Below, piece after piece: positions 1 through 46,220 of a stretch of DNA of 64,000 nt. The stretch spans positions 9,176,001 through 9,240,000 of the forward strand of contig NC_088794.1 in assembly GCF_011386835.1 (NCBI RefSeq). The letters run 5' to 3'. The notes under the pieces were generated by a model. It was given only the letters and a program-made list of their open reading frames with translations, was not told where the DNA came from and made no database searches. The DNA comes from Chrysemys picta bellii (Eukaryota). Each line of letters begins with the position of its first letter. The first letter of the stretch is position 1. The translations under genes and the position numbers were made by a program.

Positions 1-700
1 TTTTTACCGAACATTGTGACATTTCTTAATTGAATGTTTTATCAAAAATATAATGCTATAGATGACATATTGAAATATTAGAAACTTGTTTACTGTAAAT
101 GAAAAATGTCTATAACTATGTTTACAATGTTTTGATTAATTTTATGAAAAATGAAGAACATCTCTTGAAACTTTGGAATGAAAACAACTTCAAAATTTCT
201 TCTGAACGGAACTATTTTTTTTAATGTATATTTTGACCATCTCCACAAACTTGCTATCATTTTAAAACAAGCTGGCCGTTTTAGCTGATTGTGTGGATAT
301 AATAGACTTGACTTCTACAGGGTTTTGACTGGGTGCAGCACCGCGTTCTGATTTAAAACCGAGCTCAATGCAAAAGCAACGTAGAAGGGGTTAAATGGAA
401 TAAAACCCGGGTAACTAGGCGAGCATGCAGAACCCAAACCCTCATGTGCACAACTCCACCCATAATCTATATAGCCCTAACCGCAAACCTAACCTGCAGA
501 ACCTGAACCCATCCGTTCTCTGCTCAGATCTAACTCCAAACCTATTCTGCACAATGCTAAACCCAGCTCCCTCAGCTGCATCACCCGAATTTGCATAACC
601 CAACCCAAAACCTAACCCGCCTATCCCCAACTCCACCTCTAATCCGCACGACCCTAACCCTGACCTGCACCATCCTGACCCTCTCGAGTCCGGGAGAAAG

Positions 701-1015
701 GGGTTAAAAACCAAATCCTCCATTCACAGCGCAGGCAGGGCTGCGAGGGACCGGAATAGCAGAGGGACCTTCCTGTGCCAGCCCCCAGGCACCTGGGGCC
801 CCGCTCCTGAGCCGGCTCCCGGCCCGGGCGTGTACAAGGATCGGTCCCCTCTGCAGCGCGGCCCCGGGGAAATCGCCCCGGCCCGGCGGTGAGTGGGGGC
901 GCCGGGGAGACCCAGCGTCGCGGCGAGAGGCGGCCCCGGGGCGGGAGGGAGACAGCAGCAGAGGCAGGAAATCGCTGCTTGGAGGAAGTGGCAGAGCGAG
1001 GTGGGGATCGGAGCC
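701..1015 (+). promoter_or_regulatory. Shared promoter/leader-exon module, copy 1 (upstream of TBRG1-like); putative non-coding exon ~764-888
   Basis: GGGTTAAA 701-708, GGGACCTTCCTGTGCCAGCC from 764, donor GGCG|GTGAGT (GT 889-890), intronic GCAGAGGCAGGAAATCGCTG...GGGATCGGAGC; homologous to 5304-5585, 23150-23432(-), 26113-26400. Promoter role is inference. Confidence 0.7.
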
Positions 1016-1204
1016 GGGGGGGGGGGGGGCAGAGAGAGACACCCCCACTCAGCCAGCTCCGGGGCATCACGGGCTGGGGGTGGGGGTTGTGCCCTGAGCC
1101 CTGCAGGGTCCCCCAGACCAACTATATTAGCGGTACCCCCGAGCCAGCTAGTCCCCATGGGGCTGGTTCAGAGATCTCCCTCCCCCCCCCGCCCCAAGGG
1201 AAAG

Positions 1205-1483
1205 GCCCCGTGTCCCATTCCCCACATCCCTGAGCCAGCCAGGACCCGCCTCCCCCCCCAGACCCCATGTCCAATATTCTCCCACACCCCTGAGCCAGCC
1301 AGGACCCGCCTCCCCGCCCCAGACCCCATGTCCAATATTCTCCCACACCCCTGAGCCAGCCAGGACCCGCCTCCCCCCCCCAGACCCCATGTCCAATATT
1401 CTCCCACACCCCTGAGCCAGCCAGGACCCGCCTCCCCCCCCCAGACCCCATGTCCAATATTCTCCCACACCCCTGAGCCAGCC
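1205..1483. repeat. ~61-bp minisatellite, ~4.5 copies
   Basis: Unit CAGACCCCATGTCCAATATTCTCCCACACCCCTGAGCCAGCCAGGACCCGCCTCCCCCCC recurs at 1259, 1320, 1381, 1442. Confidence 0.95.
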
Positions 1484-1565
1484 AGTCTCCTGCTCAGAGC
1501 CAATCAGACAGCAGCAGTAGTGGCTTGTGAGTGAAGGGGCCCAGCCACATACCTTCTTCATAGAT

Positions 1566-1980
1566 CAGGGGTAGGCAACCTATGACACGCGTGCCAAAGG
1601 CGGCACGCAAGCGGATTTTCAGTGGCACTCGCACTGCCCGGGTCCTGGCCACCGGTCCGGGGGGCTCTGCATTTTAATCTAATTTTACATGAAGCTTCTT
1701 AAACCTTTTAAAACCCTTATTTACTTTACATACAACAATAGTTTGCATCTGAAGAAGTGAGGTTCTTACCCACGAAAGCTTATGCTCCCAATACTTCTGT
1801 TAGTCTCAAAGGTGCCACAGGACCCTCTGTTGCTTTTAACAATAGTTTAGTTCTATATTATAGACTTATAGAAAGAGACCTTCTAAAAACGTTAAAATGT
1901 ATGACTGGCACACGAACCCTTAAATTAGAGTGAATAAATGAAGACTCGGCACACCACTTCTGAAAGGTTGCCGACCCCTG
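1566..1980. mobile_element. Non-autonomous hAT-type DNA transposon
   Basis: TIRs CAGGGGTAGGCAACC / GGTTGCCGACCCCTG; 8-bp TSD TCATAGAT / TCACAGAT. Confidence 0.85.
1741..1838 (+). mobile_element. Penelope-like retroelement terminal fragment with hammerhead-like core, nested in the hAT element
   Basis: CTGAAGA 1749-1755, hairpin, GAAA 1774-1777, AGC-TTAT-GCT-C; flanked by duplicated AACAATAGTTT. Confidence 0.65.
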
Positions 1981-2990
1981 TCACAGATGCTCAAGGCCAC
2001 TGAGTCCATCCAGCCCAGCCTCCTGCATCATCTAGGCCAGACGGTCTCCCCCAGCGATTCGGTAAATAGCGCTAAGGGCAGGTCAGTTATACAGAGCCAC
2101 CCAGAGCAGCCTATTGAGTGTGTGTCTTAACACAGCCACGTGCATGGCTACACATCTAGGACAGAGGAGGTAGCCGACACTTAATAGATGAGGGGCTGTA
2201 TCCTGGAAAGGAGAAGCGCTGGGAAGGGCTTAGGGCTCATGGTGGAAACCTGCTGAACATGAGCTGCTAGTGGGAGGGAATATCGCAGTCCCTGGCTGTC
2301 CGAGTAGAGGAGTACAAGGAGAAGCAGGGATGGGGGGGTTACCTCTGTATATGGCATTAGTAAGACTGTTAGTGGGGACTCTGTCCAGTTCTGGTGTGCA
2401 CACTTCAACCAGGATGTTGCCAAGTTGCTAAGGGTTCAAAGAAGAGCTACAGGGACGATTTGAGATCTGGAAAACCTGCCTTGGAGCGAGAGACTAAGGG
2501 CTTGTCTACACAGCAAAATTTACTGGGGTAGCTCTGTAATTATACAGCTGTCATTATACTGGTGCCACTCATAGAGAGACACTTTGCACCAAGCCTAATA
2601 CCTTAAATGTTCTTTTCCTTAATCATATAGTGCATAAGAGAGCACAGATCATACAAAGCAATATACATCTGAAGTCGCAACGTCAGTAAGTCAGCCGGGA
2701 TGCAGGAATTGTTAGGGGGGGCTGGGATGGAGGGGCAAAATGGGCCTTTCTTCTGGCCTTAGCGTTTATGAAATGCGCTGTTCTGCAGAGTCCAGCTGCC
2801 TTTGCAGGGACAGAGCTAATGGAGGGAGCTCTGGGAATGGATGGGAAACAGCGATCTTTGTGTGAGTGTCCATGTGAGAGTGAATCTATGAATGTGTGTG
2901 TCTGTGTGTGCCCAGAGAGGTGATGGTGCCCGGGCTCTCTGATCCAGCAGGTCTGAAGGTGGCTATCCCTCCAGGCGGGGTGAGCTGAGG

Positions 2991-4076
2991 ATGAAGAAGG
3001 TGTCAAGGAAGAGCCAGAATGAGAAGTACCGGCTGAAGTACAGCCGGCTGCGCCGGGCGGCCAAGGCCATGGTGTTCGAGAATGCAGCACTGTGTGATGA
3101 GATTGCGCGGCTGGAGGAGAAATTCCTGCGGGCGAGAGAGGAGCGTCGATTCCTCTTCACCAAGCTGCTGCAGCTCCAGGCACTGTCAGCCGAGGAGGAG
3201 AGCCCGGCGGTGCCATTGGGGGGCATCTCAGCAGGGTACGGCGTGGCACCGACCCCTGGCCCAGATGAGCCAGCGCCTGCAGGGAAGCGGCCCAAGAAGG
3301 GCAAGGAGAATGGGCGTGCAGCCAAGCGGCGGGCAGCACCAGACAGGGGGGTGCGGCGGCTGGTGCAGCCAGTGCCGCTGGACCCCTCGGGTCGGCCGGT
3401 TTTCCCCATCGCGCTGGGTGGGCTGACGGTCTACAGCCTGGGTGAGATCGTGGCCGACCGGGCAGGCTTCCACGATGAGGGAGCCATCTACCCAGTGGGT
3501 TTCTGCAGCACACGGGTCTACGCCAGCATGCGGCGCCCCGACCAGCGCTGCCTCTACACCTGCCAGATCAAAGACGGCGGAGTGGGCCCCCGCTTTGAGA
3601 TTGTGCCTGAGGATGAGCCGGGCAGTGCCCTGGCGGGCACCACAGCTGACACCTGCCACGCCCAGCTGCTGGCGGCCATCAGTGCTGCCCGGGGGCGGCC
3701 CTACCCTGAGCTGGAGGCAGCCGGGGCTGATTTCTTCGGCTTCTCGCACCCAGCCGTGCACAACCTCATCCAGAGCTGCCCCGGGGCCCGCAAATGCGGG
3801 GCCTACCGCTGGGTGCGCTTCGAGGTGTGTCGTCCCGGGGATGGGCAGGTGCCCCAGGGGCTGCCCGACAACTGCGCAGCCACCGACTTCCAGTCCTTCC
3901 GCCGCCGCGCCCAGGAGGAGGAGGAACGGGACCGCGGAGGGGGCGGAGCTGGGGGGCGGGCACTGGGGCTGACCCCTGCCCAGGCCTTCACTTCCCCCTG
4001 CTCCTATGAGGAGGTGTTCCTGAGCCGCCCTCTCGAGTCCCCCAGCCATGGCAGCCCCGATGGCTCTGACGACTGA
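2991..4076 (+). CDS. TBRG1: TBRG1/NIAM-like protein (FYRN/FYRC domains), 361 aa, single coding exon
   Basis: N-terminal KSQNEKYRLKY..ENAALCDEIARLEEKF coiled coil, FYRN (LVQPVPLDPSGRPVFPI..IYPVGFCSTRVYAS) and FYRC (GADFFGFSHPAVHNLIQSCPGARKC) match TBRG1 as I recall it; acceptor CAGCAG| at 2950; AATAAA 4443-4448. Likely a paralog/retrocopy rather than the ortholog. Confidence 0.92.
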   Translation: MKKVSRKSQNEKYRLKYSRLRRAAKAMVFENAALCDEIARLEEKFLRAREERRFLFTKLLQLQALSAEEESPAVPLGGISAGYGVAPTPGPDEPAPAGKRPKKGKENGRAAKRRAAPDRGVRRLVQPVPLDPSGRPVFPIALGGLTVYSLGEIVADRAGFHDEGAIYPVGFCSTRVYASMRRPDQRCLYTCQIKDGGVGPRFEIVPEDEPGSALAGTTADTCHAQLLAAISAARGRPYPELEAAGADFFGFSHPAVHNLIQSCPGARKCGAYRWVRFEVCRPGDGQVPQGLPDNCAATDFQSFRRRAQEEEERDRGGGGAGGRALGLTPAQAFTSPCSYEEVFLSRPLESPSHGSPDGSDD

Positions 4077-4442
4077 GACCCCTCTCCCCCTCAGCCCTGG
4101 TGTGGCCTCCATGGAGCCACCCCCCCACAGGCCCGGTACGGCCTGCACAGCTCTTCCCATGAAGCGCCCCCTCCCCCTCCATCCCAGCCTATGCAGAGTT
4201 CCCAGCTCAGCATGGCCCCCACAGCTCCTGCCACTGAGCCCCCTCCCCCTGTGTGGGCATCACATGCCCCTGGCCTGAGCCTCACGTCTCCTCCCACTGA
4301 GCTCTCCCTCTCCACCACAGCATGACAACCCACCCCCCCCCCCGCAGCTGTGCTGGCTCTGGGGGTGGTGCTGTCTTTGGGGACCTGTGCAGCTGACTCC
4401 ACATGGGGCTTGTCCCCACCCTGTGTGAACACTCTGCTCACT

Positions 4443-4448
4443 AATAAA
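4443..4448 (+). terminator. Polyadenylation signal of TBRG1-like gene
   Basis: AATAAA ~370 nt after the stop codon. Confidence 0.65.
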
Positions 4449-5303
4449 GATGATGGTGGAAGCCACATCCCTGGCTCTGTCTGCTCCCTTTCCTGGGTGT
4501 AGGAGGGAGGGGAACAGAGGGGCAGCCGGACGGGTGAGCTACCCCTGCCCTGTTCTGGCTTATCCCATGTTAACAGCGGGATCCAAATCTGGATCTCAAT
4601 CCCTGGTCACTCAGCCATGTGGGGTGTGAGCTTAAGGGGTCACCCAAAGCTGGACAGATGGGGCAGCCTATCCTCTCCCCAGTGGCATCCTGGGGCTGCC
4701 CCCTCCCTCCAAACTAGACTCAGCCACTCCTATCCAACCTAGGCCCAAACAGACCCTTCCTCCATTGGACAGGGGCTCAGACCCACATCCACCCTCTGTC
4801 TTTCAGAGTAAGTGTGCCAGAGCTATTTGCCAGCCAGACCCATTCCTCTTCTCCCAGAGCCTGCTCCCTGTCTGTCTATAACCCTGTGCCTTCCTGCTGT
4901 GCTGGCACTGTCTCTCCTGGGAGATCAAGCAATGTCCCGTCCCCCCCCCCCAACACACACACACTCCGCGCTTCCCATCAGACCCCCCATGTCAGGGCAG
5001 ACCCTGTCTCAGCTGACCGGCTATTCCCGGCTCTGGGAGGAAATGAGGTCTTGTGGGTGGGGAGGGGAATGGAACTCAGGACTCCTGGGTTCTCTTTGCG
5101 GAGGGGGGAGTGGAGTCTAGTTGGTTAGAGCGGGGGGCCTGGGTTTTATTCCCAGCTGTGGCAGCCATAACCCATGGGCTGCCTCTGATATTGTACCACC
5201 CTGGCGCCTCTGTGCCCCCTGTCCCTGGTTCAAATCCCCCCCCCCCCCCCGAGTCTTCCCTCCTACTTTACATCTCCGTTCCCCGGCGAGCTGGGGCATG
5301 AAT

Positions 5304-5585
5304 GGGTTAAAGACACCAAGCTCCTGGAGTGGAGCCTGAAGCAGGGAGGGGGACGGGATAGCGGAGGGACCTTCCTGTGCCAGCCCCGAGCACCTGGGTC
5401 CCGAGCCCCGCTCCCCTCCCCGCCAGTGTGTGCGCGCAGGGCGAGCCCCAGTCTGCAGCCCCCGGGGGATCGCCCCGGCCCGGCGGTGAGTAGGGGCGCG
5501 GGGAGAGGCGGCCACGGCAGGGAGGGAAACAGCAGCAGAGGCAGGAAATTGCACCGCAGGGCTGGGTGGGATCGGAGCCGAACCG
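5304..5585 (+). promoter_or_regulatory. Shared promoter/leader-exon module, copy 2 (upstream of ZNF A); exon ~5366-5485
   Basis: GGGTTAAA 5304, GGGACCTTCCTGTGCCAGCC 5366, donor GGCG|GTGAGT (GT 5486-5487), GCAGAGGCAGGAAATTGC...GGGATCGGAGC. Confidence 0.7.
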
Positions 5586-6488
5586 CGGCTGGGACCGGAG
5601 GACCCCCCCCCCGGTAGCCCCGGGGTTTGTGCTGCAGGCGAGGGCCTGCCCTGCCCGGGGGGAATGGCTGTGCCAGCGATGATCCCGGGTGTGGGCTGAC
5701 TTACGCTGTGGGGAGGAAGTGTAGGGGCAGCCCAGCTGTGGAGAAGGCATGAAGGAGGGGGCCTGGTGTCTGGTGGAGCAATGATTCCCTCTCCAGGGAG
5801 CCACCTGTTCCCTGGCCACACAGTCTACCAAGGGTGAGTTAGTTTGTGGTGTGGGAGCTGGAGATAGGACTCACCCAACTCCTCTAAATGCCCACATGGT
5901 GGGAACAGCAGCTGGGCTGGCACTGAGGGCCCTCAGTGACCTGTTAGTGGGGCTTCTGCTTTTGGGGTTCACTAACTTCAGTTTTTCGGGTGTTATTTAT
6001 AACAATTTTTGAGTTCTGTGTAGATATCAAAAACTGGGGGGTTTCAGGGCTTTCTCTTTGTATATAGTGTAATGAGTAATTTATTTGCTATGGACCCTTG
6101 TGCGCTTTTACGTAGCACTGTTTCAAACAGCACTATGGTAGAGCACACTAGGGAGCTTCTAATGCGCACCAGCAGGATCCCTGTGGCCCAATTAATGCTC
6201 AACACATTCGTTCATTTGAGAAATCATACTCCTGTAGTGCACATTACTGCTCCGTCTAGACAAGCCCTTATAACCCTTCCAATGTTTGATTTCTTTTCTT
6301 TGTATTGGGGTGTGTTGTGGGTGTTTATCATCTAAAATCAGATGCCTTACCCATTAGCAATGCCCTGGGCATCCTGTGCCCAAGTAATGCCAATTTAGGA
6401 GGACATTATGTCTCTTGTGATATGCAATGTAGCTGTGTTGGTTCTAGGATATCAGAGAGACAAAGTGGGTGAGGTAAGATCTTTTATC

Positions 6489-22428: not shown

Positions 22429-23149
22429 CTGGGACTCACGGCTGGTCTGGGGGGTGGAAATCCAGCCCTGAAGACAGAAAAGAGGGGCGACCAGGGCTGG
22501 GTTGAACAGCTGTTACAAAGGACGCTCTGTGAGTTTGAACTTCTTGCCTGGAGGGACATATGATTGCGGCACATGGCAAAAAGGGCCAGGAGACCCATGG
22601 GCACAGCATGGGGGTCCTGAAGACAAAACATCTGGGTGGAAGACGTGCTAATGTGACAGGCAATGGGGATCAAACGAGGGATCTTTGGGGCCAGAGGTAC
22701 CAGCCTCTACTGCCAGGGGCCTCATCCACGCCTAAAAATTAGCTCGACCTAGCGGCATCGCTCAGGGCTGTGAAAAATGTCACGGGCTGTGCTGTAGTTA
22801 GGCCCAATACAGATGTGGCCAGGTCAAGGGGAGAAGTCTTCCTTGGTCCTAGCTACTGCCTGTGGGAGAGGTACATAAACTACATCCCTTCCACTGCTGT
22901 AGGAAGCACCTATGCCGTGGAGTTAGCAGGACAGCACTGTCCCTGTGCCCCTACAGTGTAGACATGGGCATGCCCCGAGCTCCAAGTGCAGCCAGACTCC
23001 GCAGCAGGGGCTGGAACAGAGACTCTCTAGCGGGGACCCTGCGCGCTGCCCAGGGGCTAAGCAGAGAGACAAGGGGCGGGGGCGGTTATATCTTCTATAG
23101 GACCAGCTGGCAGGGAGGGGGGATCTCTCTGGTCCCAGGCACAGGGCAG

Positions 23150-23432
23150 CTCAGATCCCCGGCCCTGCGGCCGCTTCCTCCCGACAGCGATTTCCTCCCT
23201 CTGCGGCTGTTTCCCTCCCGCCCCGGAGCCGCGTCTGCCCCGCTCACCGCCCTGCCGGGGCCCGGGGCTGCAGCCGGGGACTGGCCCTGCGCACACACAG
23301 GCCGGGAGCCGGGCTGGGGACCCAAGTGTCGGTCGGGGCTGGCACAGGAAGGTCCCTCTAGTTATTACGTCCCCAACCCGGGCCGGCTTCTCCTGCTCTG
23401 ATCTGGGGTGAGGAACTCGGTGGGTTTAACCC
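23150..23432 (-). promoter_or_regulatory. Shared promoter/leader-exon module, copy 3 (upstream of ZNF B); exon ~23356-23248
   Basis: Minus strand: GGGTTAAA 23432, GGGACCTTCCTGTGCCAGCC 23356, donor GGCG|GTGAGC (23247), GCAGAGGGAGGAAATCGCTG...GGGATCTGAGC. Confidence 0.7.
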
Positions 23433-23799
23433 ATCCCTCCCCAGACGTCAAGGGAGCGGATTTCTCTCCCTCTCGGGCCTCTGGCTGCCTGCGGGAGTGA
23501 GAGGCTGGGTCCACACAGCTCACACAGGATGTCAAGCTGCTTGGAGTGGCTCATCAACGTGGGTGCCAGCCTCAGGGCCGAGTGATGCAAACCAGGGCAC
23601 AAACCCCAACCCGGTTGTGTGTTCTATTACATAGATTTCACCAACCTAGTATCAAATGTGAACTCCTCCAGCGCTATAATAACTACTTTAACTGGAGTCA
23701 CTGGCAGTTGCCATGGGCACTCGGTCTAGCTTGCCCCCCGGGCAAACCTGCTTTTGTGAGAGATGATCCCTGACACCAAAAATTACAACAATAGTCAGA

Positions 23800-26003: not shown

Positions 26004-26112
26004 GCCCCCATTGACTCCAGTGGAATTGGGGCCAATTTACCCCAGTGGGGGACCTGCCCCATTTCTCACAAGGTATTTAGTGGCTCATGCAGCATCATGG
26101 CTGGGGTGGGAA

Positions 26113-26400
26113 GGGTTAAGCCCAGTGAATCCTGAGTCTGCCACTTCACAGAGCAGACAGCTGGGACGGGGACAGGATAACGGAGGGACCTTCCTGACAG
26201 CGCCCGGCCAGCACCTGGGTCCCCAGCCCGGTCTGGCCCGGGTGTGAGCAGCGGGGTCTGCGGGGATCGCCCCCGCCGGGCGGTGAGTGGGGGGTGCCGG
26301 GCTGCAGCGAGGGGCACCGGGGAGGGAGGGAGAGAAACAGCCGCGGAGGCAGGAAATCGCTGCCCGGGGGAAGCCGCTGCAGGGAGGAGGGGATCGGACT
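26113..26400 (+). promoter_or_regulatory. Shared promoter/leader-exon module, copy 4 (upstream of ZNF C); exon ~26185-26282
   Basis: GGGTTAA 26113, GGGACCTTCCTG 26185, donor GGCG|GTGAGT (GT 26283-26284), GGAGGCAGGAAATCGCTG...GGGATCGGA. Confidence 0.7.
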
Positions 26401-26721
26401 GGAGAGACCCCCGCTCCCCAGCCAGCTCCGGGGCGGTATGAGCTGGGAACAGGGCTGGGGCAATGGGGGTGGGGGAGCATTGGCAGAGCTGTGCCTGGGG
26501 GAAGCGCCGACAGACCCAGCCTGGCTACTGGCCCCTCTCTCCCCCACACCCCCACAGCGCCCCCTGCTGGTCTGTGCTCCCCTCCCCATTCCCTGCAGTC
26601 TCCCCTCTCACAGCCCACTCTCCCCAGTGGGTCCCAGGCCCTGGCCCCATGGTGACCCGTTCCGCTCTTCCCCAGGACGCGGTGCATGCGAGTGAAGGTT
26701 GAATGAGTGACCTCGGAGAAG

Positions 26722-35227: not shown

Positions 35228-35428
35228 CTACTCGATGTTGTCGTAGACCCGGATCACCTCCTGGCAGTCGCCCAGCATGGAGAGCAGCTGGGATGCCCGC
35301 TCCATCTCCTCATCGGTCAGCCGCACCCTGGCATTGGGGATGAACTCCAGGGCAGCGGAGAGCGACTGTAGCCCCTTCGAGTCCAGCTTCTGCCGCACCT
35401 GGTGCAGTGATGGCACCTCACACACAAA
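35228..35428 (-). CDS. TACO1: TACO1 coding exon 5 (FVCEVPSL..VYDNIE*)
   Basis: Acceptor CTCAG|35428, stop TAG; YebC/PmpR-family C-terminus D..EV..VYDN. Confidence 0.93.
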   Translation of the reverse strand, partial: FVCEVPSLHQVRQKLDSKGLQSLSAALEFIPNARVRLTDEEMERASQLLSMLGDCQEVIRVYDNIE

Positions 35429-36378
35429 CTGAGGGGAGAGGACAGGACAGGGGCTGTGAGGGGCTGCAAACCTGCCCACTGGCCCCCCGGGCCGCAGCAG
35501 AGCAGCGTGGGTGCCCGCTGAACAGACAGTGTGGGCCACGTCGCCCCCGCTGGGCCTGATCTGTAGAGCCTGCCTCTTCAGAGCCGGCCATCGCTAGTTC
35601 AATGCCTAGTGCTGGCTACCATCTAACTTGCCGTCTGACCCCCATTCACCCTGTCCCTGCACTGCGGTTCCAGGGGATTTAACCCCCCACCCCAGGAATA
35701 ATGGCAGCAAAGGCGGGCCCAGGCAGTCACTCTGGTGGGACAGGGAGTGCAGGACGAGCCCCCAGGTACATGCTACAGCAGCCTCGGGGCAGCTCTCACT
35801 TATACACAGTCCCCCTGGGGAAGCAGAGAATGGGACAGAGGGCAGCGAGCGATGCCCAGGCCAGCCAGGGAAGACCCTGAGGGGGGCTGTTTCCAACCTC
35901 CTTACGCTCCCATAGCATTCTCGAGGGTAACTGCAAAGCATACCCAGCCAATGCCTCCCACATATCCTGTGTATAATCCCCCTGAGCCAGGGGTACACCA
36001 GCCAGAACCCCACATCTCTCCCCTCCCCTGGGCCATAGCAATACCAGATCCCCACGATTCCTCCCCTTCCCCGGCCAGATCAGTGCCAGCCAGACCCTCA
36101 GGTATCTCTCCCATCACCTGAGCTGGATCAGAACCAGCCAGACCCCCACATATCTCCACACCTGTCCCCCGAACCAGATTAGCACCAGGTGGGCCCCGAT
36201 TGGTGCCTGAGCAATTACATCAACTGGCTGCCACCCCCCATTGGCTGATGGTATCTCCCGCTCCACAGTCCCACGTTCTCCCAGCAGCCCTCACTGCAGC
36301 AGCAGGAGGGCCCTGTGGCAAGGACCACAATGGACTTGCCACTATGTTAGCCAGGGAGCCCCTGTCACACATACCCAC

Positions 36379-36556
36379 CTTCAGAACTGCTTGCTCCTTC
36401 TCGTCGTCTTCTTCCCACACATCCTGGGCCCCGGCCTCGATCGCCAGCTCCAGGGCCTGCTCCAGGGCCACTGGCCTCTGCTGAGAGTCCTGCCCGCTGA
36501 CCGTGATCACCCCCTTCTTGTCAAAGCTGTGCCGGGCCCCGTCGGACATCTGCACC
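36379..36556 (-). CDS. TACO1: TACO1 coding exon 4
   Basis: RHSFDKKGVITV..ALELAIEAGAQDV; AG/GT boundaries; 178 nt, phase consistent. Confidence 0.93.
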
Positions 36557-39457
36557 CTGCATGGGAAAAGGGGGACATCAGGGGACAGGGAGTCACTTCT
36601 ATACAGCATGAGAGAGACCATTCCTGGATGCTGGTCCAGGGGATTCGTGCTTTGCACAGGATGGAGACGAGGGAGGAAGGGCTCAGAGAAGAGCCACAAG
36701 AATGATTCACCTGCCTCATAGAGAGAGCTTGAAGACTCTCAGCGTACTGAATTTATCCCAGAGATGTCAAAGGCCCATTGTGCTCATCCAGCCAGACTCC
36801 TGCCTAGCCCAGGCCAGAGAATCTCCCCCCTTGATTACTGCTGCCAGCCCAGTAACTCCTGGCTGAGCTAGAGATGCCTTTGAGAAAAAGACACCCCCTC
36901 TCCACTGACAGACTCCCAGTGATGGAGAATCCACCTCGTCCCTTGGGGAGCTGTTCCAGTGATTCATTCCCCTCCCTGGTAACCATGGGCTCCTTGTTCC
37001 CAGCCTGAATTTGTCTCCCTTCAGCTCCCAGCCAGTGGATCTCACTCTGCCTTTGTCTGGTGGTTGAAGACCCCTCTGCTCTCAGAAATCCTCTCCCCAT
37101 GTCGGTGCTTATAGACCAGGATCACATCACCTCTTACCCTTCTCTGAGATAAACTACATTGAACGAGCTCCTTTGGTCCTTCGTTCAGAGGCAGGTTTTC
37201 CAGCCCCCAGATTGCTCTTGTAGTTCTTCTCTGAATCCATAACAATGTAAATGGTTTGGGAAGAGGTTTAAGCTACCTCCAATTAAGCCCTTCTTGCACA
37301 GATATAAGAGAGTCCACCCAGAGATGTGTTGTGATAACTGGGCTGGCAAATTTACCCTAATTGTGAGCTCAACTGTAAAAAGTATGTAAAAATTCATGAG
37401 ATGTCACAGTAGCCTTTAGAATCATAGGACTGGAAGGGGCCTTGAGAGGTCATCTAGTCCAGTGCCCTACACTCAATGCAAGACTAAGTATTATCTAGAC
37501 CAGCGGTTCTCAAACTTTAGCAACCCAAGAACCCCCATTTTAATTTAAAATTTTTCAGGGATCCCCAAGTCCCCGCACTCCGCCCTTCCCTGAGGCCACG
37601 CCCCCGCCCTGCTCCTTCTCCGAGGCCCTGCCCCCCGCTCACTCCGCCCCCCAGCTCAATCCAACCCCTCTCTCCATCACACGGTCTCTCCCTCATTCAC
37701 TTTTACCAGTCTGGGGTAGGGGGTTGGGGTGCAGGCTCTGGGAGGGAGTTTGGGTGCAGGAGTTGGGGTTCTTGGCAAATCCATGATGACTGTTACCTTA
37801 TCATCTTCTAGGTGTTTGCAAATTGATTGCTTAATTAGTTTCTCTATTATCTTTCCAGGTACTGAAGTTAAGATGACTGGTCTGTAACTCCCTGGATTGT
37901 CTTTATTTCCCTTTTTATAGATTGGCACTATATTTGCCCTAATAACAAATGCTGATGGGAAAAGGTATGAAAGAGACAGAAAGAATGAAATAGTCTAAAA
38001 CAAAAAGGCTGACAAGTATAACTCAAGGGCTACATTGAAATCATCCTTACTAAACACCAAAGATGTGGAACTAGAAATGAATGAACCAAAATTGGTGAAT
38101 CAGAAATTAGGCCTAATTGCTGAACAGGATAACAAGGGGCTTGGCTATTCCACCCATCGGTACATTTTGGGGTCCTTAAAGTAATTTAGGGGGAAATATG
38201 GGAAGAACCGATGGAGACTATTAGACCCAGACCCCTTTCACCCTAATCCTCAGGGATATCCTGACCAGTCCAGGCCAAAGATAGGGACTCAGTTGACATC
38301 ACCACCCCTACCAACTCGAGCTGAATCCCAGGTTATGTCTCTACTGCAACTGGACACTTGCTTCTGGCTTGTGCCACTTGACTCGGGCTTGCGCTAAGGG
38401 GCTGTTTAATTGCAGTGTAGACATCCGAGCCCAAGCTCTGGGACCTTCCCCCCCTCCCCCTCCGCCATTGGGTCCCAGAGCTCAGGCTCCATCCTGACCT
38501 AAATGTCTACACCACAGATGAACAGCCTCTTAGCCCAAGCCAGCTGGCATGGGCCAGCCACGGGTGTCTCTTAGCAGTGCAGACAAAGCCCCAAACATGA
38601 GATAAAATGCGATCAGACTTTAGCAGCAGCAGCAACGGCTACAGCTCATCTCAACTAACTTACTTTTTTAGCGCAAAGACCAGTAATCACCATCTTTGGG
38701 ACCATCTAAGAGACCGGAGAAACCCTTGTTTGACATCTAAAGACTCTCTCCATCCAGAAGGGAAGTTATTAAAATCAAAGCCTTACTCAATACTTTACAT
38801 CTCAAAGGCTTTTAACTGTTTTGCCTTCTTTTCCGAATCTTTAACAAAAGGATTTTTAGTGGGGTGTTTGCCACGCTGCTAAGCAGCATGAAGTCTCTGT
38901 ATCCCAAACCCCGAACCTTGTGTAACACTTTTTAATGTTGGACAGTGACATTGTTAGGTTAACACCTTTGGCCCATTTATTCCAGCTAAATTAATGCCAC
39001 AGGTGTGCACCAGTTTAATTAAACCCGTTTAAGTTAATCCGGTGCACCTGTTCCAGTAAACCCGGGGTAACATTTCCCAAAGAATCTAAATCACTTAAGA
39101 ACCTGAATCCCATTGACTTTCCAAGACTTGGGCTCCTAAAGGCTGAAAGTCACTTTTGAAAATGGGACTATGGCTCCTAAACCACTTAGGTGCTTTTGAT
39201 AATTTAACCCAAGGTCTTGCTTATTACAACTTCATGTACAGACCAGCCCTGACCCACATGTGGACTGTATGTTGTGGCCAGGCTGTAGAGAGCGTTAGCC
39301 AGCTATTTCCCTGCACTAATGCATTGTGTTTATCTCAACCACTAGACACTCATGTTTTAAGACCCGGAAGTGTCAGGTTTGGTCACTGCATGGAGCACGG
39401 GAAGGGCCTTTGTGCAATGAAATGCAGGATTGTCGGGCCCGGCAGGGAAGGACTGAC

Positions 39458-39588
39458 CCATTGCGTCTCAGGATGAGCCGAATATCCTGGTAGGTTCGCT
39501 TTGCATTGTCCGTCAGCACCTCAATGAGCAGCGCAGATCCCCCAGGGCCTCTGGCTTCGTAGAGCAGGTACGAGCTCTTCCCTTTGTC
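39458..39588 (-). CDS. TACO1: TACO1 coding exon 3
   Basis: DKGKSSYLLYEARGPGGSALLIEVLTDNAKRTYQDIRLILRRNG; GCAG|..|GTCAGT; missed by the ORF track. Confidence 0.92.
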
Positions 39589-39729
39589 CTGCAGCGAGAA
39601 GGGGCAGATTCAGCTTTGCAGCTGGGCTTATGTCTTGGGAGGTGTTAGGGGGCTTTCCCTTCACCCCCTCCCCTGGTTCTTGTCACGCAGACAGAAAGCA
39701 GAAGCCTGGAAGTCCTAAGTGCAGGCACT

Positions 39730-40637
39730 CTGTGTTCCCTGTAAGCTGCGCACTTGGCCATGCAGGAGAGATTCAAATGCCGGCCAGCTGATTAGAGAGC
39801 CCGTACAGCCAGCAACGTGTGTTCAGGTGCCCCATCCCTCATGTTGCTCTGTACTGCAACTTCTCCCGAAACCCTCCTGCTGGCTATGCAGAGCAGGGGT
39901 GGGAGAGGAGGGTGCTGATGTCAGGGTGTCCCACTTCCCCCACCCCTGTACCCCACCTCCGCAGAGTAGGGCAGAGGGGACAGCCTGGCTCAGGACTAGG
40001 AGCTGCTGTGGTCTGAGGTCTGAATGGTGAGTGGCTGGGTGCCTTTCTTAAAGAGACAGTGCACGGTTCCCGAGATTTCCCCAGCAGCCAGCACTCAGTC
40101 TCAGTCTCTCTCACACACACACTCTTCCCCCTCCCCCTGTAGCCCATCTCCCCAGAGCAGAGGCGGGGAAACAGGGCTCGGGACAGAGCAGGAGAGCTTT
40201 CAGTGAGTGACTTAAAGAGACAGTGCATGGCTTTCTCCAGCAGCCAGCACACACCCAGAATCTCTGTGTCACACACACACACACACACACACATATATAC
40301 ACACACACACAGTCTCGTTCACACTCACCTCCCAACACATACTTGTATTATTGTTGTTACTTCTTGGTACTTCCTTCAATGCACATATATTCTCTGTAGT
40401 TTTATTCTTTCAAAGTGTGCTATTTTAGAGTTTAGACTGGTCTATGCATTTAATAATTTTTATTTCTCTCTTACACTTAAATTTAATTCTTTGAGTAGTG
40501 AGTTCTAAAATGCCTAACCTGTCCTGGCTGGAGTAATTATCCTTTTTATTTCTACGGGTGGCGCACATCCACACATACCTTGGTGCACATAACAAAATTT
40601 ATTCCGCACATGGATGGAAAAATTAGAGGGAACATTG
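39730..40637. mobile_element. Non-autonomous hAT-type element in a TACO1 intron
   Basis: Ends CTGTGTTCCCTGTAAG / TTAGAGGGAACATTG; TSD CAGGCACT / CAGGCAAT. Confidence 0.8.
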
Positions 40638-41482
40638 CAGGCAATGCAATGTTTATTGGGGTTAGTTTCAAGCAAGCATCTCCATGGCTCTGATGCCACA
40701 GAGCCTTTACCTGTGTCCCCGTTCCCTATTCCCACCTCCTTAGCAGGCCCAAATATACCTGCAGTGCACGTCCCTGGTCCCACCCCTTACAATTTATGGT
40801 CATGTCCCTTTTCGGAGGGTCATGAGTCTGGGGTCGGGGTACCACCTCTTTTGTATCCCATGGGAGGGGTAAGGAGTGAGGTTGTGTTCTGGCCAAGGCC
40901 AGGCCTTTCTTTGGCCTTTAGTGTTTCTTATGCCTCCTCCCCATCCCCTCTTGCCCCTCCTGACTGGTTGCTTGACCTTGGCTTGAGAGAAGTGCCAGGC
41001 AGCCTTCCAGCATATGCTCAGATATTTATACACCCAAACACACCCAGTAACACTTTCAACACTCTCCTCTCATTGTACTAACAAGCCCATCTGGCTGGGT
41101 AGAAGGAACACATAGTGTCTTTGCTCACAGATATTAGTAAGGATAAAAGAGCATCAAAAGTCAAGCCCAAAATTCTGCCCCAGGCTAACAAACAGGCCAA
41201 TATACTAACATGAGGTCCTGGGGTTAAACAATAAAGGCCAAGTCTCCGTCCATCCCCAGGCCCCAGATATACGTTACTGGTGGCTCCTGCACTACCCAGG
41301 AATGGCTCCTGCTTCCTCTCTGGATGCACATGCACAAGGGATCCAACAGCAAACTGGAGCCATAGAAACACTCAATGTTTATGATCTGAAGTGGAGCACC
41401 AGACCTGGAAACTGGGGCAAAGGAGGGGGCCCTCTGGAGCAATAGATTGTAGGCTTTGCCATATGGGATCAACACCAAGGTC

Positions 41483-42527
41483 ATAGAATCCTAGAAGATT
41501 AGGGTTGGAAGAGACCTCAGAAGGTCATCTAGTCCAACCCCCTGCTCAAAGCAGGACCAACCCCAACTAAATCATCCCAGCCAGGGCTTTGTCAAGCCTG
41601 ACCTTAAAAACCTCTAAGGAAGGAGATTCCACCACCTCCCTAGGTAACCCATTCCAGTGATTCACCACCCTCCTAGTGAAATAGTGTTTCCTAATATCCA
41701 ACCTAGACCTCCCCCACTGCAACTTGGGACCATTTCTCCTTGTTCTGTCATCTGCCACCACTGGGAACAGCCTAGCTCCATCCTCTTTGGAAGCCCCCTT
41801 CAGATAGTTGAAGGCTGCTATCAAATCCCGCTTCACTCTTCTCTTCTGCAGACTAAACAAGCCCAGTTCCCTCAGCCTCTCCTCATAAATCATGTGCCCC
41901 AGCCCCCTAATCATTTTTGTTGCCCTTCGCTGGACTCTCTCCAATTTGTCCACATCCTTTCTGTAGTGGGGAGCCCAAAACTGGACACAATACTCCAGAT
42001 ATGGCCTCACCAGTGCCAAATAGAGGGGAATAATCACTTCCCCCGATCTGCTGGCAATGCTCCTACTAATGCAGCCCAATATGCCATTAGCCTTCTGGGC
42101 AACAAGGGCACACTGCTGACTCATATCCAGCTTCTCATCCACTGTAATCCCCAGGTCCTTTTCTGCAGAACTGTCGCTTAGCCAGTCGGACCCCAGCCTG
42201 TAGTGGTGCATGGGATTCTTCCTTCCTAAGTGCAGGACTCTGCACTTGTCCTTGTTGAACATCATCAGATTTCTTTTGGCCCAATCCTCCAATTTGTCTA
42301 GGTCACTCTGGACCCTATCGCTACCCTCCAGCATATCTACCTCTCCCCCCAGCTTAGTGTCATCCGCGAACTTGCTGAGGGTGCAATCCATCCCATTATC
42401 CAGATCATTAATGAAGATGTTGAACAAAACCGGCCCCAGGACAGACCCTCTGAGGCACTCCGCTTGATACCGGCTGCCAGCTAGACATCGAGCCGTTGAT
42501 CACTACCTGTTGAGCCCGACGATCTAG
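41483..42527 (-). mobile_element. CR1 3' portion (RT C-terminal half + tail)
   Basis: ORF 41567-42427 [32 protein letters not shown]; CR1 tail. Confidence 0.93.
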
Positions 42528-42698
42528 GTCCATCTAGCTCAGTCTCCTATCACTGACAGCACCCAGAGCCTAGACTTCAGCCCAAGCCCAAACATCTACG
42601 TGGCAACTTTACAGCCCTGCAGCCCAAGCCCCACGAGCTCAAGCCAGCTGACCCAGGCCAGCCACAGATATTTCATTGCTGTGTAGACGTACCCATGG

Positions 42699-43372
42699 CA
42701 GTGTTCCCTCTAATTTTTCCCACCAATGTGCGGAATGAATTTTGTTCATTATGTGCACCAATACGGAGGTGAAGTGTGACACATCATCTTCATATTGGTG
42801 CACATAACAAAATTCATGTGGTGGGGGAGGGGCTGAGGAGTTCTTGTGGGAGGGGGCTCAGGGCTGGGGCAGAGGGTTGGGGTGCAGGGGTGTGAGGGCT
42901 CTGGCTGGTGGTGCGGGCTCTGGGGTGGGGCCGGGGATGAAGGGCTCGGGGCTGGGGCAGAGGGTTGGGGTGCAGGGGTGTGAGGGCTCTGGCTGGGGGT
43001 GCAGGCTCTGGGGTGGAGATGAGGGGTTTAGGGTGCAGGAGGGTGCTCCAGGCCTATTGCAGGGAGAGAGGACTCCCCCCAGCGCTCTCCCCACAGCAAC
43101 ACCTGGGTTTGGGGGTGGGGAGAGGCGCCTGTCCCCGCCGCGGGAGCTCTGGGGCTGGAGGATAGGCACCCCTCCCCCTGGCCCCAGCAGGTCCGGGCCA
43201 GGCCTGGGGCCAGCCGCGGCCCAATCCGGCCGCGGCTGAGTCCAGGCCGCAGGGTGAGTTGTGGCTGGGGGAGGGGCGCCCCTTCCCTGGTAGGTCCCCG
43301 GGCAGGTTCCCTAAGCGCCTGCGCTGCACTAAATAGGCTGCTGTGCGGCCGCAGAGTTTACAGGGAGCTTAG
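42699..43372. mobile_element. Non-autonomous hAT-type element, same family as 39730-40637, opposite orientation
   Basis: Ends CAGTGTTCCCTCTAA / TTTACAGGGAGCTTAG; TSD ACCCATGG / ACTCATGG. Confidence 0.78.
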
Positions 43373-45404
43373 ACTCATGGTGAACAAGTTTGGGGCCCCG
43401 TTGGGCTGGACCCCAGCACAGACACACCATGACTAAGACTGTAGCCCTGTCCCACTGGGCACGGCAGAGACAGAGAGTAACTGAGATTTGGTCCCCATTG
43501 TGCCGGATGCGGCTCCAGCACATGGTCATTGAGAAAAAGTCCCCGTCACACTGGGCATGCACAGATACACGGCGACCCCCATCGCAACAAGTGCTGCACA
43601 GATACACCAAGTAGTTGACAGTCCCTGCCTCAAAGAACGTATAATCTATAGACAGGACACAGGGTGGAGAAAATGGGAACCACAGACTATTCCTGTGTAA
43701 TAGTACTTGAGTTTTCACTAAATCTTTCACAATTATTTTTGCTATTCTTCCCCCCACCCCGGAAACAAGCTCCTCCCCCCCGATACATTTTTTGAACCAG
43801 GACATTTTCAAAAATGAATTTACAAGAGAAGAAGATTAGATGCACATTCCACTGGCCCCCCCTCAGGAAAAACATAACAGTACAGTGTGACCAAACTAAC
43901 CAATCAAAAGTTACTGGTAGCAATACCGGGTGGAGGGGGGTGGGGGCGGTTTCCATTTGCTCTAGTTCATTTTGCAGTTTTCACCCTTGTGCATGTGTGT
44001 GCGTTTTGCAACTGGGTGACTTTTGATTGGGCAAATACAAATGGGTTTATTATCTCAGACCCTATTTGCAAAAGGGGAAACTGAGGCACAGACAAACCAA
44101 TGTCAAATTTATTACATGTTCACTGTTGGGCTGTCCTGGGTCTATGACAGACATGTTTCAACCCTAACCCTCGGGTTGAATAGACTCAGGGGAAATGGAT
44201 GCAGGCCACTTATTTTGGGGCCCACATAGGGTTGGGGCCCCAATTTGAGAGGGCTTAAAGGAGTGTGACTTCCAGAGACTGGGACCCTGGCACTTTCTGA
44301 GAACCAAGTCGCTTTATACAATCCCAAGATGGGGCAGCTTGAAGTCAGGGATGCTCTTGAACTAACAGAGGGCTGGACAGAGAACAGAGATTGAGAGCAT
44401 CTGCTCTCCCCATCCTATAACCACAGATGGTCAAAACACTGGCAGCAAAACAGTTTTCCATTGGAAAAGGTAGTTTTGTTAGAATCGAAACATTTCACAA
44501 GAGCTTGTCAATTTTGATGTGAAAATGAATCACTTAAATTTTCTCAGTTCAAGAATACGAAAAATGTGTTTTACTAAGGTAACACTTCGTTTTGACTGTA
44601 TTGTTCCAGTTCATTCCAATTTTACATTTTATTATATTAATTTCAATGTAGGTTTAATATTTTCTATTAAATTACAAGGTTATGGCATTAGTGAAAGGAA
44701 ATAATTCAGTGTGTCTGAATTGTATTGTCTGAATTTTCTTTCCACCAAACATTTTAAAATCTAAATTTTCTAATCCGATTCAGCATGAAAACAAATTAGA
44801 AGTGGCAGAATCTCCCGTGGGATGGACATTCTGTTTCCCAATCATCTCTACTTGTAACACAAGGACTAGAGAATGTTCCTTGAAATAAAAGGTGGGAAAT
44901 TCAAAGCTGATCATAGAAAATACTTTTTCACACAAAGGGTGATTATCCTGTGGAACTCACTGACACAGGATGTCACAGGGGGCAAGAACTTAGCAAACAA
45001 CTTCTGGCAGGGATATTAAACCTCCTGCTTCAGGGCTTGAGCTGACTGTAACTATTACAGACCAAGCTGAGACCTAACGCAGGATGATTATCCCCACATC
45101 TGCTACTGAGGGATTCTTACACCTGCCTCTGCAGCCTCTGGTGCTGGAAACAGGACACTGGAGTGGACACACCTCTGCTCTGATCCAGTCTGGCAATTCC
45201 CTATGACCCAAGTGATTTGCTCAAGGTCACAGAGGGAGCAAGTGGCAGAGCTAGGAATAGAAACCACAAGTCCTGTAGCCCGGCCTCGTTCAAGGCTCCC
45301 AATGCCCCTCTGCATAGCCTGGCCTGGCCCAGAGAATGCAGCAAGGCTGCAGCCTATAAGCCCCTCTGCCCCCTGAGCTGAGCTGGCAGGACCCGGCTAC
45401 GTAC

Positions 45405-45511
45405 CCCTCCCTTGATGGCCACCTCAATGGATGATTTGGGCATGCTCTTGCTCCGGCACTGCTCAATGATGTTGGCCAGGTTGGTATTGAGATCAGGGTT
45501 GGGTCCCCCTT
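45405..45511 (-). CDS. TACO1: TACO1 coding exon 2
   Basis: [36 protein letters not shown]; 107 nt, AG/GT boundaries. Confidence 0.93.
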
Positions 45512-46220
45512 CTGCAATAGGACAGAAAGGGGGTGTCATAAGGGAGACATGGCTGTGATCCCATTCCAGACAGTCCTGATTCCCAGCTCCCATTGCTATA
45601 ACCCACCAGCCTCCAATCCCCTCCCAGAGCCAGGGATAGAATCCAGGCATCCTGACTCTGAGACCCCCTTACTCTAACCCACTATCCCCCTCCCAGAGCC
45701 AGGGATAGAACCCAGGAGTCCTGAGGTCCCTGGTGACCCTCCCTGCTCCAAACCACCTATCCCAAGGCCCTTCCTCCCTTCAGCCACCATTATCTGTTAC
45801 CTCAGGCCGCCTGAACCCCAGGGACTGGGCTGCCCCCCTCTTATGCGAAACAGCTACTAGAGTGGAGCACAGACCGAGCCACCTTACAGGAGGTGCTGTG
45901 GGACAAAGGAAAGGTCCAGTGGAGAAAGGATGAGAAGGGGAGAGACACTACCCCACAGACCAGCATCCTCTCCTCCAGCAGCCGAGGAGGATAACAGAGG
46001 TTAGGGATGCTGGGGTTAGGGGCAGCGCTACTGGTCAAGGCTGGGCTCTGTAGCCACAGCCTCTGGCTAGGGCTGGGCCCCATCAGGTGCTGGGAGGCGG
46101 GAAGTCTCTGTAGCCCTCCCTCTGGCTGTGACAGGGCCTGTGGGGCACTGGGAAGCTGGCGGGGCTCTGTAGTGCCCCCTCTGTCTGGGGCTGTATCACA
46201 CACAGGATCCGCCCCGGTAC

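What the first reader, a model, noticed from the sequence alone, without database searches (positions are those of the whole stretch)
764..4465. Intact intronless TBRG1 copy apparently expressed from a captured ZNF-type leader exon
Seen: a full 361-aa TBRG1-like ORF in one exon, with an acceptor 40 nt before the ATG, a downstream AATAAA and module copy 1 upstream. Established: vertebrate TBRG1 (NIAM, an ARF/MDM2/p53-linked growth regulator) is multi-exon. Inference: a retrocopy that landed behind a ZNF-cluster promoter (or replaced a ZNF coding region) and has been kept open, with FYRN/FYRC conserved and linkers diverged. A retained extra copy of a p53-pathway gene in a long-lived reptile lineage would be notable.
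Basis: partly seen in the sequence, partly recalled or inferred. Interest (0 to 1): 0.7.

Follow-up and report, generated by a model that had tools for sequence, protein, structure and literature searches.

The report
Turtle's ordinary TBRG1, an ancient retrogene
The intronless TBRG1 here is real and under selection, but it is the standard TBRG1 of turtles, crocodilians, birds and lizards, an old processed copy that apparently replaced the multi-exon original, not an extra copy special to long-lived turtles.

Summary
Window 2991-4076 (+) is an intact 361-aa single-exon TBRG1 with an INO80E-like coil, FYRN and FYRC. A tandem acceptor lies 40/43 nt before the ATG. AATAAA is at 4443. A CpG-island leader module lies upstream, with its donor at 889/890.

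- **It is a retrogene.** Bowfin and echidna TBRG1 are multi-exon, share intron positions and sit beside SIAE. The turtle ORF lacks all eight of those introns and sits beside TACO1.
- **It is not an extra turtle copy.** The same intronless gene is annotated as TBRG1, never "-like", in at least 15 turtle species, crocodilians, ratite birds and lizards. The locus is conserved. The coding sequence is also intronless in a caecilian and in axolotl.
- **No second sauropsid TBRG1 protein was found.**
- **It is under purifying selection,** with dN/dS 0.11-0.16.
- **The leader is shared locally.** The turtle leader exon is a paralogue of the leader modules of three neighbouring C2H2-ZNF genes, and it is present in all four turtle lineages sampled. 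The crocodile uses a different leader exon but the same acceptor.

A softshell-turtle contig matches exon 2 end to end. This is an ordinary annotated gene with a modestly interesting evolutionary history.

The parts
698..1071 (+). CpG-island promoter and leader module, copy 1, upstream of TBRG1. GC 0.72, CpG observed/expected 0.61. The core is GGGACCTTCCTG, which I read as ETS-like (inference).
   Evidence: Orthologous copies lie upstream of TBRG1 in a sea turtle (L001 8557-8926), Emydura (L010 8202-8607) and, in part, Pelodiscus (L008 8643-8703).
764..889 (+). Putative non-coding exon 1 (leader). The donor is GGCG|GTGAGT at 889/890. The 5' end (transcription start) is not mapped.
   Evidence: The donor column is invariant in all six aligned module copies. 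The Platysternon model P0001 joins this exon to about 2943. The N-terminus of Carettochelys isoform X1 (P0127) translates the module core.
890..2947 (+). 5'-UTR intron, about 2.06 kb. It contains a 61-nt tandem repeat at 1191-1485 and a 416-nt insertion at 1565-1981 that the sea turtle lacks.
1987..2079 (+). Alternative cassette exon with its own ATG. It is used in the predicted longer isoforms of other turtles.
   Evidence: Residues 1-38 of Caretta isoform X1 (P0003) map here. Malaclemys P0144 and Caretta P0153 map here too.
2946..2950 (+). Tandem (NAGNAG) splice acceptor tccAG|cAG|. Exon 2 starts at 2948 or 2951.
   Evidence: Conserved in a sea turtle, Pelodiscus, Emydura and crocodile (ctccAG|tAG|). 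RefSeq isoform pairs that differ by one residue occur in Caretta, Alligator, Carettochelys and Dermochelys. The Pelodiscus contig L009 begins within 1 nt of this site.
2991..4076 (+). TBRG1 coding sequence in one exon: 361 aa plus the stop. The INO80E-like coil is at nt 3024-3167, FYRN at nt 3402-3578 and FYRC at nt 3585-3824.
   Evidence: dN/dS is 0.11-0.16.
4077..4466 (+). 3' UTR with AATAAA at 4443-4448. Cleavage is expected at about 4466.
   Evidence: By analogy, the Pelodiscus contig L009 ends 18 nt after the orthologous AATAAA with a non-genomic A.
5301..5638 (+). Module copy 2, the leader of the downstream C2H2-ZNF gene (zinc-finger exon ORF 8822-9952).
   Evidence: The fusion models P0144 and P0153 splice it to 8025-8147 and to the zinc-finger exon, matched over about 8714-9949.
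23066..23435 (-). Module copy 4, lying 5' of the minus-strand ZNF array at 15285-16682.
26111..26446 (+). Module copy 3, lying 5' of the ZNF array at 28415-29524.
35234..46359 (-). TACO1 coding exons at 35234-35437, 36439-36564, 39451-39588, 45402-45530 and 46210-46359. TACO1 is the conserved sauropsid neighbour of the TBRG1 retrogene.
   Evidence: tblastx with the lizard and rhea TACO1 regions. TACO1 is the next gene after TBRG1 in the lizard L002 and the rhea L007.

Best explanation
This is the turtle's normal, functional TBRG1 (NIAM) gene. In sauropsids that gene is an ancient retrogene. A processed TBRG1 mRNA of the short isoform, without the fish HARE-HTH part, was reverse-transcribed. 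It inserted away from the ancestral SIAE-linked locus, next to TACO1, no later than the common ancestor of lizards, turtles, crocodilians and birds. The multi-exon parent was then apparently lost, making this an 'orphan' retrogene. Amphibians also carry an intronless TBRG1. Whether that comes from the same event is unresolved.

The promoterless copy is expressed through an acquired structure. A CpG-island promoter drives a non-coding exon 1, and a 5'-UTR intron of about 2 kb is spliced to a tandem acceptor 40/43 nt before the ATG. The acceptor is shared with crocodilians. The exon-1/promoter module of turtles belongs to a local family that also heads the neighbouring C2H2-ZNF genes, and it has been in place since before the crown turtles.

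Shown here:
- the ORF and its domains;
- the missing ancestral introns;
- the different locus and its conserved synteny;
- purifying selection;
- the homology of the modules and the conservation of the donor and acceptor.

Inferred:
- loss of the parent in this genome;
- actual use of exon 1 in this species;
- the direction in which the leader was captured;
- the biochemical function, taken from mouse and human NIAM.
For: **Identity.** Pfam finds FYRN, FYRC and the INO80E coil. The solved human TBRG1 FYR domain 2wzo matches at E 3.7e-74. All best hits are TBRG1.

**Retro origin.** Echidna TBRG1 spans 8.5 kb next to SIAE. Bowfin TBRG1 spans 8.5 kb next to SIAE. The two share at least five intron positions. 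All eight echidna intron positions fall inside the uninterrupted turtle ORF.

**Same intronless gene elsewhere.** The coding span equals the coding length in each of these:
- sea turtle, 1086 bp;
- Pelodiscus;
- Emydura;
- Crocodylus, 1155 bp;
- Podarcis, 1023 bp;
- Rhinatrema, 1134 bp;
- axolotl, 1221 bp.

In the rhea, the exons of the model lie within one 1.6-kb stretch.

**Synteny.** TACO1 (-) follows TBRG1 (+) in the lizard and the rhea, and TACO1 exons are in this window at 35.2-46.4 kb.

**Naming.** At least 15 turtle species and the crocodilians call it TBRG1 and never '-like'. No other sauropsid TBRG1 cluster is among the 120 best hits.

**Selection.** dN/dS is 0.114 between the emydid and the sea turtle, 0.13-0.16 between turtles and crocodilians, and 0.11 between crocodile and alligator.

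**Expression structure.**
- The donor is invariant in all module copies.
- The NAGNAG acceptor is conserved from turtles to crocodile.
- Gene models splice the leader to exon 2.
- The Pelodiscus contig L009 runs from the acceptor to 18 nt past AATAAA and ends in a non-genomic A.
- The spliced 5' UTR has no upstream ATG.

**Precedent.** Exon gain, CpG-island promoters and orphan retrogenes are the documented routes for retrogenes (PMC4772013, PMC3548309).
Against: - No genome-wide search of this turtle for a second, SIAE-linked TBRG1 could be run. The absence of a parent rests on protein databases and on annotation names.
- The run search only shows that 14 small, probably transcriptomic, contig sets hold about 80% of the exon's words.
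- The library type of the Pelodiscus contig is unknown.
- The gene tree does not resolve when retroposition happened. It places caecilians with mammals at 90/90. The AU test rejects neither an intronless clade (p 0.165) nor an amniote clade (p 0.349).
- No poly(A) remnant or target-site duplication is visible, as expected at this age.
- The amphibian loci were seen only as gene spans, not as DNA.
Confidence: 0.8

Rival explanations
1. This is an additional, lineage-specific retrocopy kept alongside a canonical multi-exon TBRG1, giving turtles an extra dose of a p53-pathway regulator.
For: The ORF is intact, intronless and selected. The ancestral gene is multi-exon. This genome was not searched for a second copy.
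Against: The same gene at the same locus is the annotated TBRG1 of all turtles, crocodilians, ratites and lizards examined. No other sauropsid TBRG1-like protein is among the 120 best hits, down to E 1e-113, a range that includes fish at 52% identity. No entry is named '-like' in any reptile.
Confidence: 0.06
2. A rival about timing. A single retroposition happened in the tetrapod stem. The parent and the retrocopy then coexisted until mammals lost the retrocopy, and amphibians and sauropsids each lost the parent.
For: The coding sequence is intronless in a caecilian, axolotl and all sauropsids sampled. All of these, and mammals too, lack the fish HARE-HTH domain. The AU test does not reject an intronless clade (p 0.165).
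Against: The free tree does not recover that clade. Caecilians group with mammals at 90/90. The amniote clade costs less likelihood (3.4 against 7.0 log units). Amphibian synteny with TACO1 was not seen. The scenario needs long coexistence followed by three losses.
Confidence: 0.35
3. A rival about the leader. The neighbouring turtle ZNF genes copied TBRG1's promoter and leader module as the ZNF cluster expanded between TBRG1 and TACO1, rather than TBRG1 capturing a ZNF leader.
For: The three ZNF genes between TBRG1 and TACO1 are absent from the lizard and the rhea, where TACO1 follows directly. The module copies are only 67-73% alike, and their tree has no informative root.
Against: The crocodile has a module-2-like element 1.2 kb downstream of TBRG1, at the orthologous position. 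Its TBRG1 leader exon (L005 about 7633-7872, with a GCGCATGCGC motif) is not module-like. This suggests the module first belonged to the downstream neighbour.
Confidence: 0.25
4. The gene is not a retrocopy. It moved by DNA-level translocation and then lost all its introns one by one.
For: No poly(A) tract or target-site duplications remain.
Against: All eight ancestral coding introns are missing together in every lineage that carries the relocated gene. No intermediate with some introns was seen.
Confidence: 0.03

Closest known systems
[quoted passage not shown]
   Same: The domain order is the same: an N-terminal coiled coil followed by contiguous FYRN and FYRC. The FYR domain aligns without gaps to the solved human domain 2wzo (E 3.7e-74). 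Full-length identity is 53-56%. By homology, the function is presumed to be a growth inhibitor and activator of the ARF-Mdm2-Tip60-p53 pathway (PMC4231569).
   Different: The mammalian gene has about nine coding exons and lies next to SIAE. The turtle gene has a single coding exon, lies next to TACO1 and ZNF genes, starts at an internal Met of the mammalian protein, and has shorter linkers. No functional test exists for any reptile.
Orphan retrogenes, that is, retrogenes that replaced their parents (Ciomborowska et al. 2013, PMC3548309; Carelli et al. 2016, PMC4772013)
   Same: It is an intronless, selected copy at a new locus, with no parent detectable in the lineage. It gained a 5' exon and is expressed from a CpG-island promoter.
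   Different: Here the replacement is in sauropsids, and perhaps amphibians, while mammals keep the parent. Full-text searches did not find TBRG1 listed as such a case. Loss of the parent was not verified on a genome.
Fish, coelacanth and lungfish tbrg1
   Same: They share the coiled coil and the FYRN/FYRC core at 52-60% identity. They have the multi-exon structure and the SIAE neighbour, as in mammals.
   Different: They carry an extra N-terminal HARE-HTH domain (PF05066) and are 500-630 aa long. That domain is absent from all tetrapod forms.

Membership tests
TBRG1/NIAM protein family | Contiguous FYRN and FYRC domains | tested here: met
   Pfam FYRN scores 90 bits against a cut-off of 24, and FYRC 63.5 bits against 21. 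PDB 2wzo matches at E 3.7e-74 over aa 134-279.
TBRG1/NIAM protein family | N-terminal INO80E-type coiled coil before the FYR domain | tested here: met
   PF24237 scores 31.7 bits against a cut-off of 27.8, over aa 12-59.
TBRG1/NIAM protein family | Best database matches are TBRG1 proteins across vertebrates | tested here: met
   All named hits among the best 120 are TBRG1, apart from a few chimeric or unnamed 'hypothetical protein' models. Tetrapod sequences form one clade at 100/99.
TBRG1/NIAM protein family | Positional orthology, meaning the ancestral locus next to SIAE | tested here: not met
   Echidna and bowfin TBRG1 abut SIAE. The window instead carries ZNF genes and TACO1. The gene is therefore a retro-derived co-orthologue, not a positional orthologue.
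TBRG1/NIAM protein family | Binding of ARF, MDM2 and Tip60, and growth inhibition | not testable with these tools
   Known only for the mammalian protein (PMC4231569).
Functional retrogene | All parental coding introns are absent | tested here: met
   Eight echidna intron positions, at least five of them shared with bowfin, map inside the uninterrupted ORF.
Functional retrogene | The locus differs from that of the parent | tested here: met
Functional retrogene | Poly(A) remnant and target-site duplications | tested here: not met
   None is visible after 4466 or around the exon. This is expected for an insertion that I estimate, from my own knowledge of divergence dates, at more than 250 million years old. 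It is not decisive.
Functional retrogene | Purifying selection on the ORF | tested here: met
   Nei-Gojobori dN/dS is 0.11-0.21 in all pairs.
Functional retrogene | Transcription | tested here: inconclusive
Indirect support comes from the exon-2-shaped Pelodiscus contig, from one-residue isoform pairs at the NAGNAG acceptor, and from 14 small contig sets that hold the exon.
Orphan retrogene (parent lost) | No parental gene in the same genome | not testable with these tools
   The only support is indirect. No second sauropsid TBRG1 cluster was found, and no entry is named '-like'.

The most novel reading that the evidence does not exclude
TBRG1 is an orphan retrogene in all sauropsids, and possibly in all non-mammalian tetrapods. 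The multi-exon, SIAE-linked gene survives only in mammals and fishes, while reptiles, birds and amphibians run this p53-pathway regulator from a processed copy more than 250 million years old. That copy built a new promoter, leader exon and 5'-UTR intron. In turtles it swapped its leader for a module shared with a local ZNF cluster, to which it can be joined in predicted read-through transcripts.
Probability: 0.55. Interest if true: 0.4.

Novelty: new member of a known kind. Interest (0 to 1): 0.3.

Why it matters
The finding removes a tempting but unsupported story, that turtles hold an extra p53-pathway gene tied to longevity.

What remains is a clean and apparently undescribed example of a retrogene taking over from its parent across a major vertebrate clade. 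The steps by which it gained its regulation can be dated:
- the acceptor is shared by turtles and crocodilians;
- the leader module is specific to turtles.

It also warns that 'TBRG1' orthologues of mammals and reptiles are not positional orthologues. Their promoters and regulation therefore cannot be assumed to be comparable.

Tried and rejected
- **RNA read laying.** No read-level evidence was obtained for this species. I used P0002 or other database proteins, or window pieces beside the place. One local blastn inside my own script still contained the stretch. It compared the window only with loci already fetched. All later scripts left the stretch out.
- **Gene tree to date the retroposition.** It came out unresolved.
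- **Representative-library search.** Turtles collapse into the mammalian 50% cluster, so it could not reveal a second copy. It did lead to the ostrich and rhea TBRG1.
- **Scan notes.** A search for TBRG1, FYRN or SIAE in this genome found nothing.
- **Literature.** No paper links TBRG1 with retrogene, intronless or retrocopy.
- **Coelacanth locus.** It is not on record.
- **Caecilian and axolotl DNA.** It was not retrievable, so only gene spans were seen.
- **Pseudogene reading.** Rejected, because the ORF is intact in all species and dN/dS is about 0.1.
- **Joined spliced model.** I did not search a joined leader-plus-exon-2 sequence.


Full report
**What is there**

Window 2991-4076 (+) is an uninterrupted 361-codon ORF. 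Pfam finds an INO80E-type N-terminal coil (aa 12-59), FYRN (aa 138-196, 90 bits) and FYRC (aa 199-278, 63.5 bits). Residues 134-279 align without gaps to the solved FYR domain of human TBRG1, PDB 2wzo, at E 3.7e-74.

The surrounding features are these:
- The ATG is preceded by a pyrimidine tract and a tandem acceptor tccAG|cAG| at 2946-2950.
- The only AATAAA in the 1.1 kb after the stop is at 4443.
- Upstream, 698-1071 is a CpG island (GC 0.72, CpG observed/expected 0.61) flanked by CpG-poor DNA.
- That island is one of four copies of a module of about 350 nt. The others are at 5301-5638 (+), 26111-26446 (+) and 23435-23066 (-).
- All copies share a core GGGACCTTCCTG and an invariant donor GGCG|GTGAG, at 889/890 in copy 1.
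- Each of the other three copies lies 5' of a C2H2 zinc-finger exon.

**It is a processed copy**

Echidna TBRG1 (401 aa) spans 8.5 kb and abuts SIAE tail to tail. Bowfin tbrg1 (631 aa) does the same. Mapping each protein to its locus shows at least five shared intron positions. One example is a 24-25-aa exon followed by a 78-aa exon in both species. All eight echidna intron positions fall inside the turtle ORF, at about residues 29, 53, 108, 152, 201, 232, 270 and 318.

The multi-exon, SIAE-linked state is therefore ancestral. The turtle gene lacks all those introns and lies elsewhere. The window holds ZNF genes and, on the minus strand at 35.2-46.4 kb, the five coding exons of TACO1.

**It is not an extra turtle copy**

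The 90% cluster around the best hit holds the same 361-aa protein, named 'transforming growth factor beta regulator 1' and never '-like'. It comes from:
- sea turtles;
- Gopherus, Mauremys, Pangshura, Terrapene and Macrochelys;
- Pelodiscus and Carettochelys;
- the pleurodire Emydura.

Crocodilians have a 384-aa version.

The coding span equals the coding length in a sea turtle, Pelodiscus, Emydura, Crocodylus, the lizard Podarcis, the caecilian Rhinatrema and axolotl. Ostrich and rhea have divergent, repeat-expanded versions within one 1.6-kb stretch.

Synteny is conserved:
- In the lizard and the rhea the order is a ZNF-like gene (-), TBRG1 (+), then TACO1 (-). In the rhea and the crocodile a TRIM-like gene follows.
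- In turtles, three ZNF genes sit between TBRG1 and TACO1.

Among the 120 best database hits, which reach down to fish at 52% identity, every sauropsid entry is of this intronless type. The unnamed entries look mammalian, salamander-like, lizard-like or fish-like at their N-termini.

I could not search this genome directly.

**Selection**

I computed Nei-Gojobori dN/dS from codon 19 onward, leaving out places 3006-3042:

| Pair | dN/dS |
|---|---|
| This emydid vs sea turtle | 0.114 |
| Turtle vs crocodilian | 0.13-0.16 |
| Crocodile vs alligator-like contig | 0.11 |
| Lizard vs others | 0.12-0.21 |

The window protein is 100% identical to the matching part of a Malaclemys model and 99.7% identical to Terrapene. 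The source is therefore an emydid.

**How it is expressed (partly inferred)**

The evidence for the leader exon and the acceptor is as follows:
- The Platysternon model reads from the leader module across 889 into about 2943.
- Carettochelys isoform X1 begins with a translation of the module core.
- Caretta X1 uses the cassette exon at 1987-2079.
- Isoform pairs that differ by one residue occur in Caretta, Alligator, Carettochelys and Dermochelys. This is what a NAGNAG acceptor produces.
- The acceptor motif is conserved in a sea turtle, Pelodiscus, Emydura and crocodile.
- A 1592-nt Logan contig from Pelodiscus starts within 1 nt of the acceptor. It ends 18 nt after the orthologous AATAAA with an A that the genome lacks, so it has the shape of exon 2 of a polyadenylated mRNA.
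- The spliced 5' UTR has no upstream ATG.

For the window's own species I have only one indirect observation. Afterwards I worked beside that place, as described under Tried and rejected.

**The leader module**

- A module lies upstream of TBRG1 in the emydid, a sea turtle and Emydura in full, and in Pelodiscus in part with an earlier donor. It therefore predates the crown turtles.
- In a module tree, the TBRG1 leaders and the orthologues of module 2 separate at 87/83.
- No module lies upstream of TBRG1 in the crocodile, the lizard or the rhea.
- The crocodile leader exon is at L005 about 7633-7872. The N-terminus of Alligator X1 maps there. It carries a GCGCATGCGC motif and is not module-like.
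- The crocodile does have a module-2-like element 1.2 kb downstream of TBRG1, at the orthologous position.

The simplest reading is that the module first belonged to the downstream neighbour and was copied in front of TBRG1 in the turtle stem. The reverse direction is not excluded.

**Timing**

Tetrapod TBRG1 is monophyletic (100/99) and sauropsids form a long-branched clade (100/99). The placement of amphibians and mammals is unresolved. Caecilians group with mammals at 90/90. The AU test gives p 0.165 for an intronless clade and p 0.349 for an amniote clade.

The retroposition is therefore at least as old as the sauropsid ancestor. Whether amphibians share the event remains open. The start Met of the reptile protein is an internal Met in lungfish, mammals and axolotl.

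**Comparison with what is known**

Mammalian NIAM/TBRG1 is a growth inhibitor and an activator of the ARF-Mdm2-Tip60-p53 pathway (PMC4231569). Gain of 5' exons, use of CpG-island promoters and replacement of parents by 'orphan' retrogenes are all documented for mammals (PMC4772013, PMC3548309). Full-text searches did not find TBRG1 described as a retrogene.

**Verdict**

This is an ordinary, already annotated gene. The longevity angle is unsupported. The retrogene-replacement history is a modest and apparently unreported point.

Noticed in passing
window 4013 to 5301-5500, 8025-8147 and about 8714-9949; proteins P0144 and P0153: Two independent gene models join most of the TBRG1 coding sequence, through an internal GAG|GTG donor near 4013, to module copy 2 and the downstream ZNF exons. 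They are Malaclemys 'LOC128835588' (1288 aa) and a Caretta model (871 aa). These may be read-through TBRG1-ZNF chimeric transcripts or a prediction artefact.
   Followed up: partly
window 1565-1981; related copies at 6519-6694: A 416-nt insertion in the 5'-UTR intron is absent from the sea-turtle orthologue. Pieces of 88-90 nt are repeated at 99-100% identity in both orientations about 4.7 kb downstream. It is probably a young SINE-like or other transposable element.
   Followed up: partly
window 1191-1485: A tandem repeat of a 61-nt C-rich unit, in 4-5 copies at 98-99% identity, lies inside the 5'-UTR intron. The sea turtle has one unit.
   Followed up: no
window 26838-27857: An array of about 20 copies of a 48-nt unit at 97-99% identity lies just after module copy 3 and before the ZNF exon at 28415-29524. 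It creates long spurious ORFs on both strands.
   Followed up: no
window 17294-19393 (+); 32517-33359 (-); 41570-42427 (-): These are LINE fragments. One has endonuclease and reverse-transcriptase ORFs. Two further reverse-transcriptase pieces lie inside TACO1 introns.
   Followed up: partly
window 46868-47016 (-): A weak fifth module-like element (nhmmer E 2e-4) lies about 0.5 kb upstream of the first coding exon of TACO1. It has the sequence CAGGGACCTTCCGG followed by a GTGAGT donor. The module family may therefore not be restricted to ZNF genes.
   Followed up: partly
window 61934-62408: A G-rich degenerate tandem repeat with a period of about 46 nt (GGGGGGACACGGGGAGACCCGAGCCGCGC...) lies near the end of the window.
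   Followed up: no
L007 (Rhea) 10527-12117; P0167 (ostrich): The ratite TBRG1 proteins are much more divergent than those of turtles and crocodilians. They have long acidic (E/D) and PRxDG repeat expansions and a degraded FYRC end. The bird branch seems to evolve fast. No neognath TBRG1 turned up.
   Followed up: no
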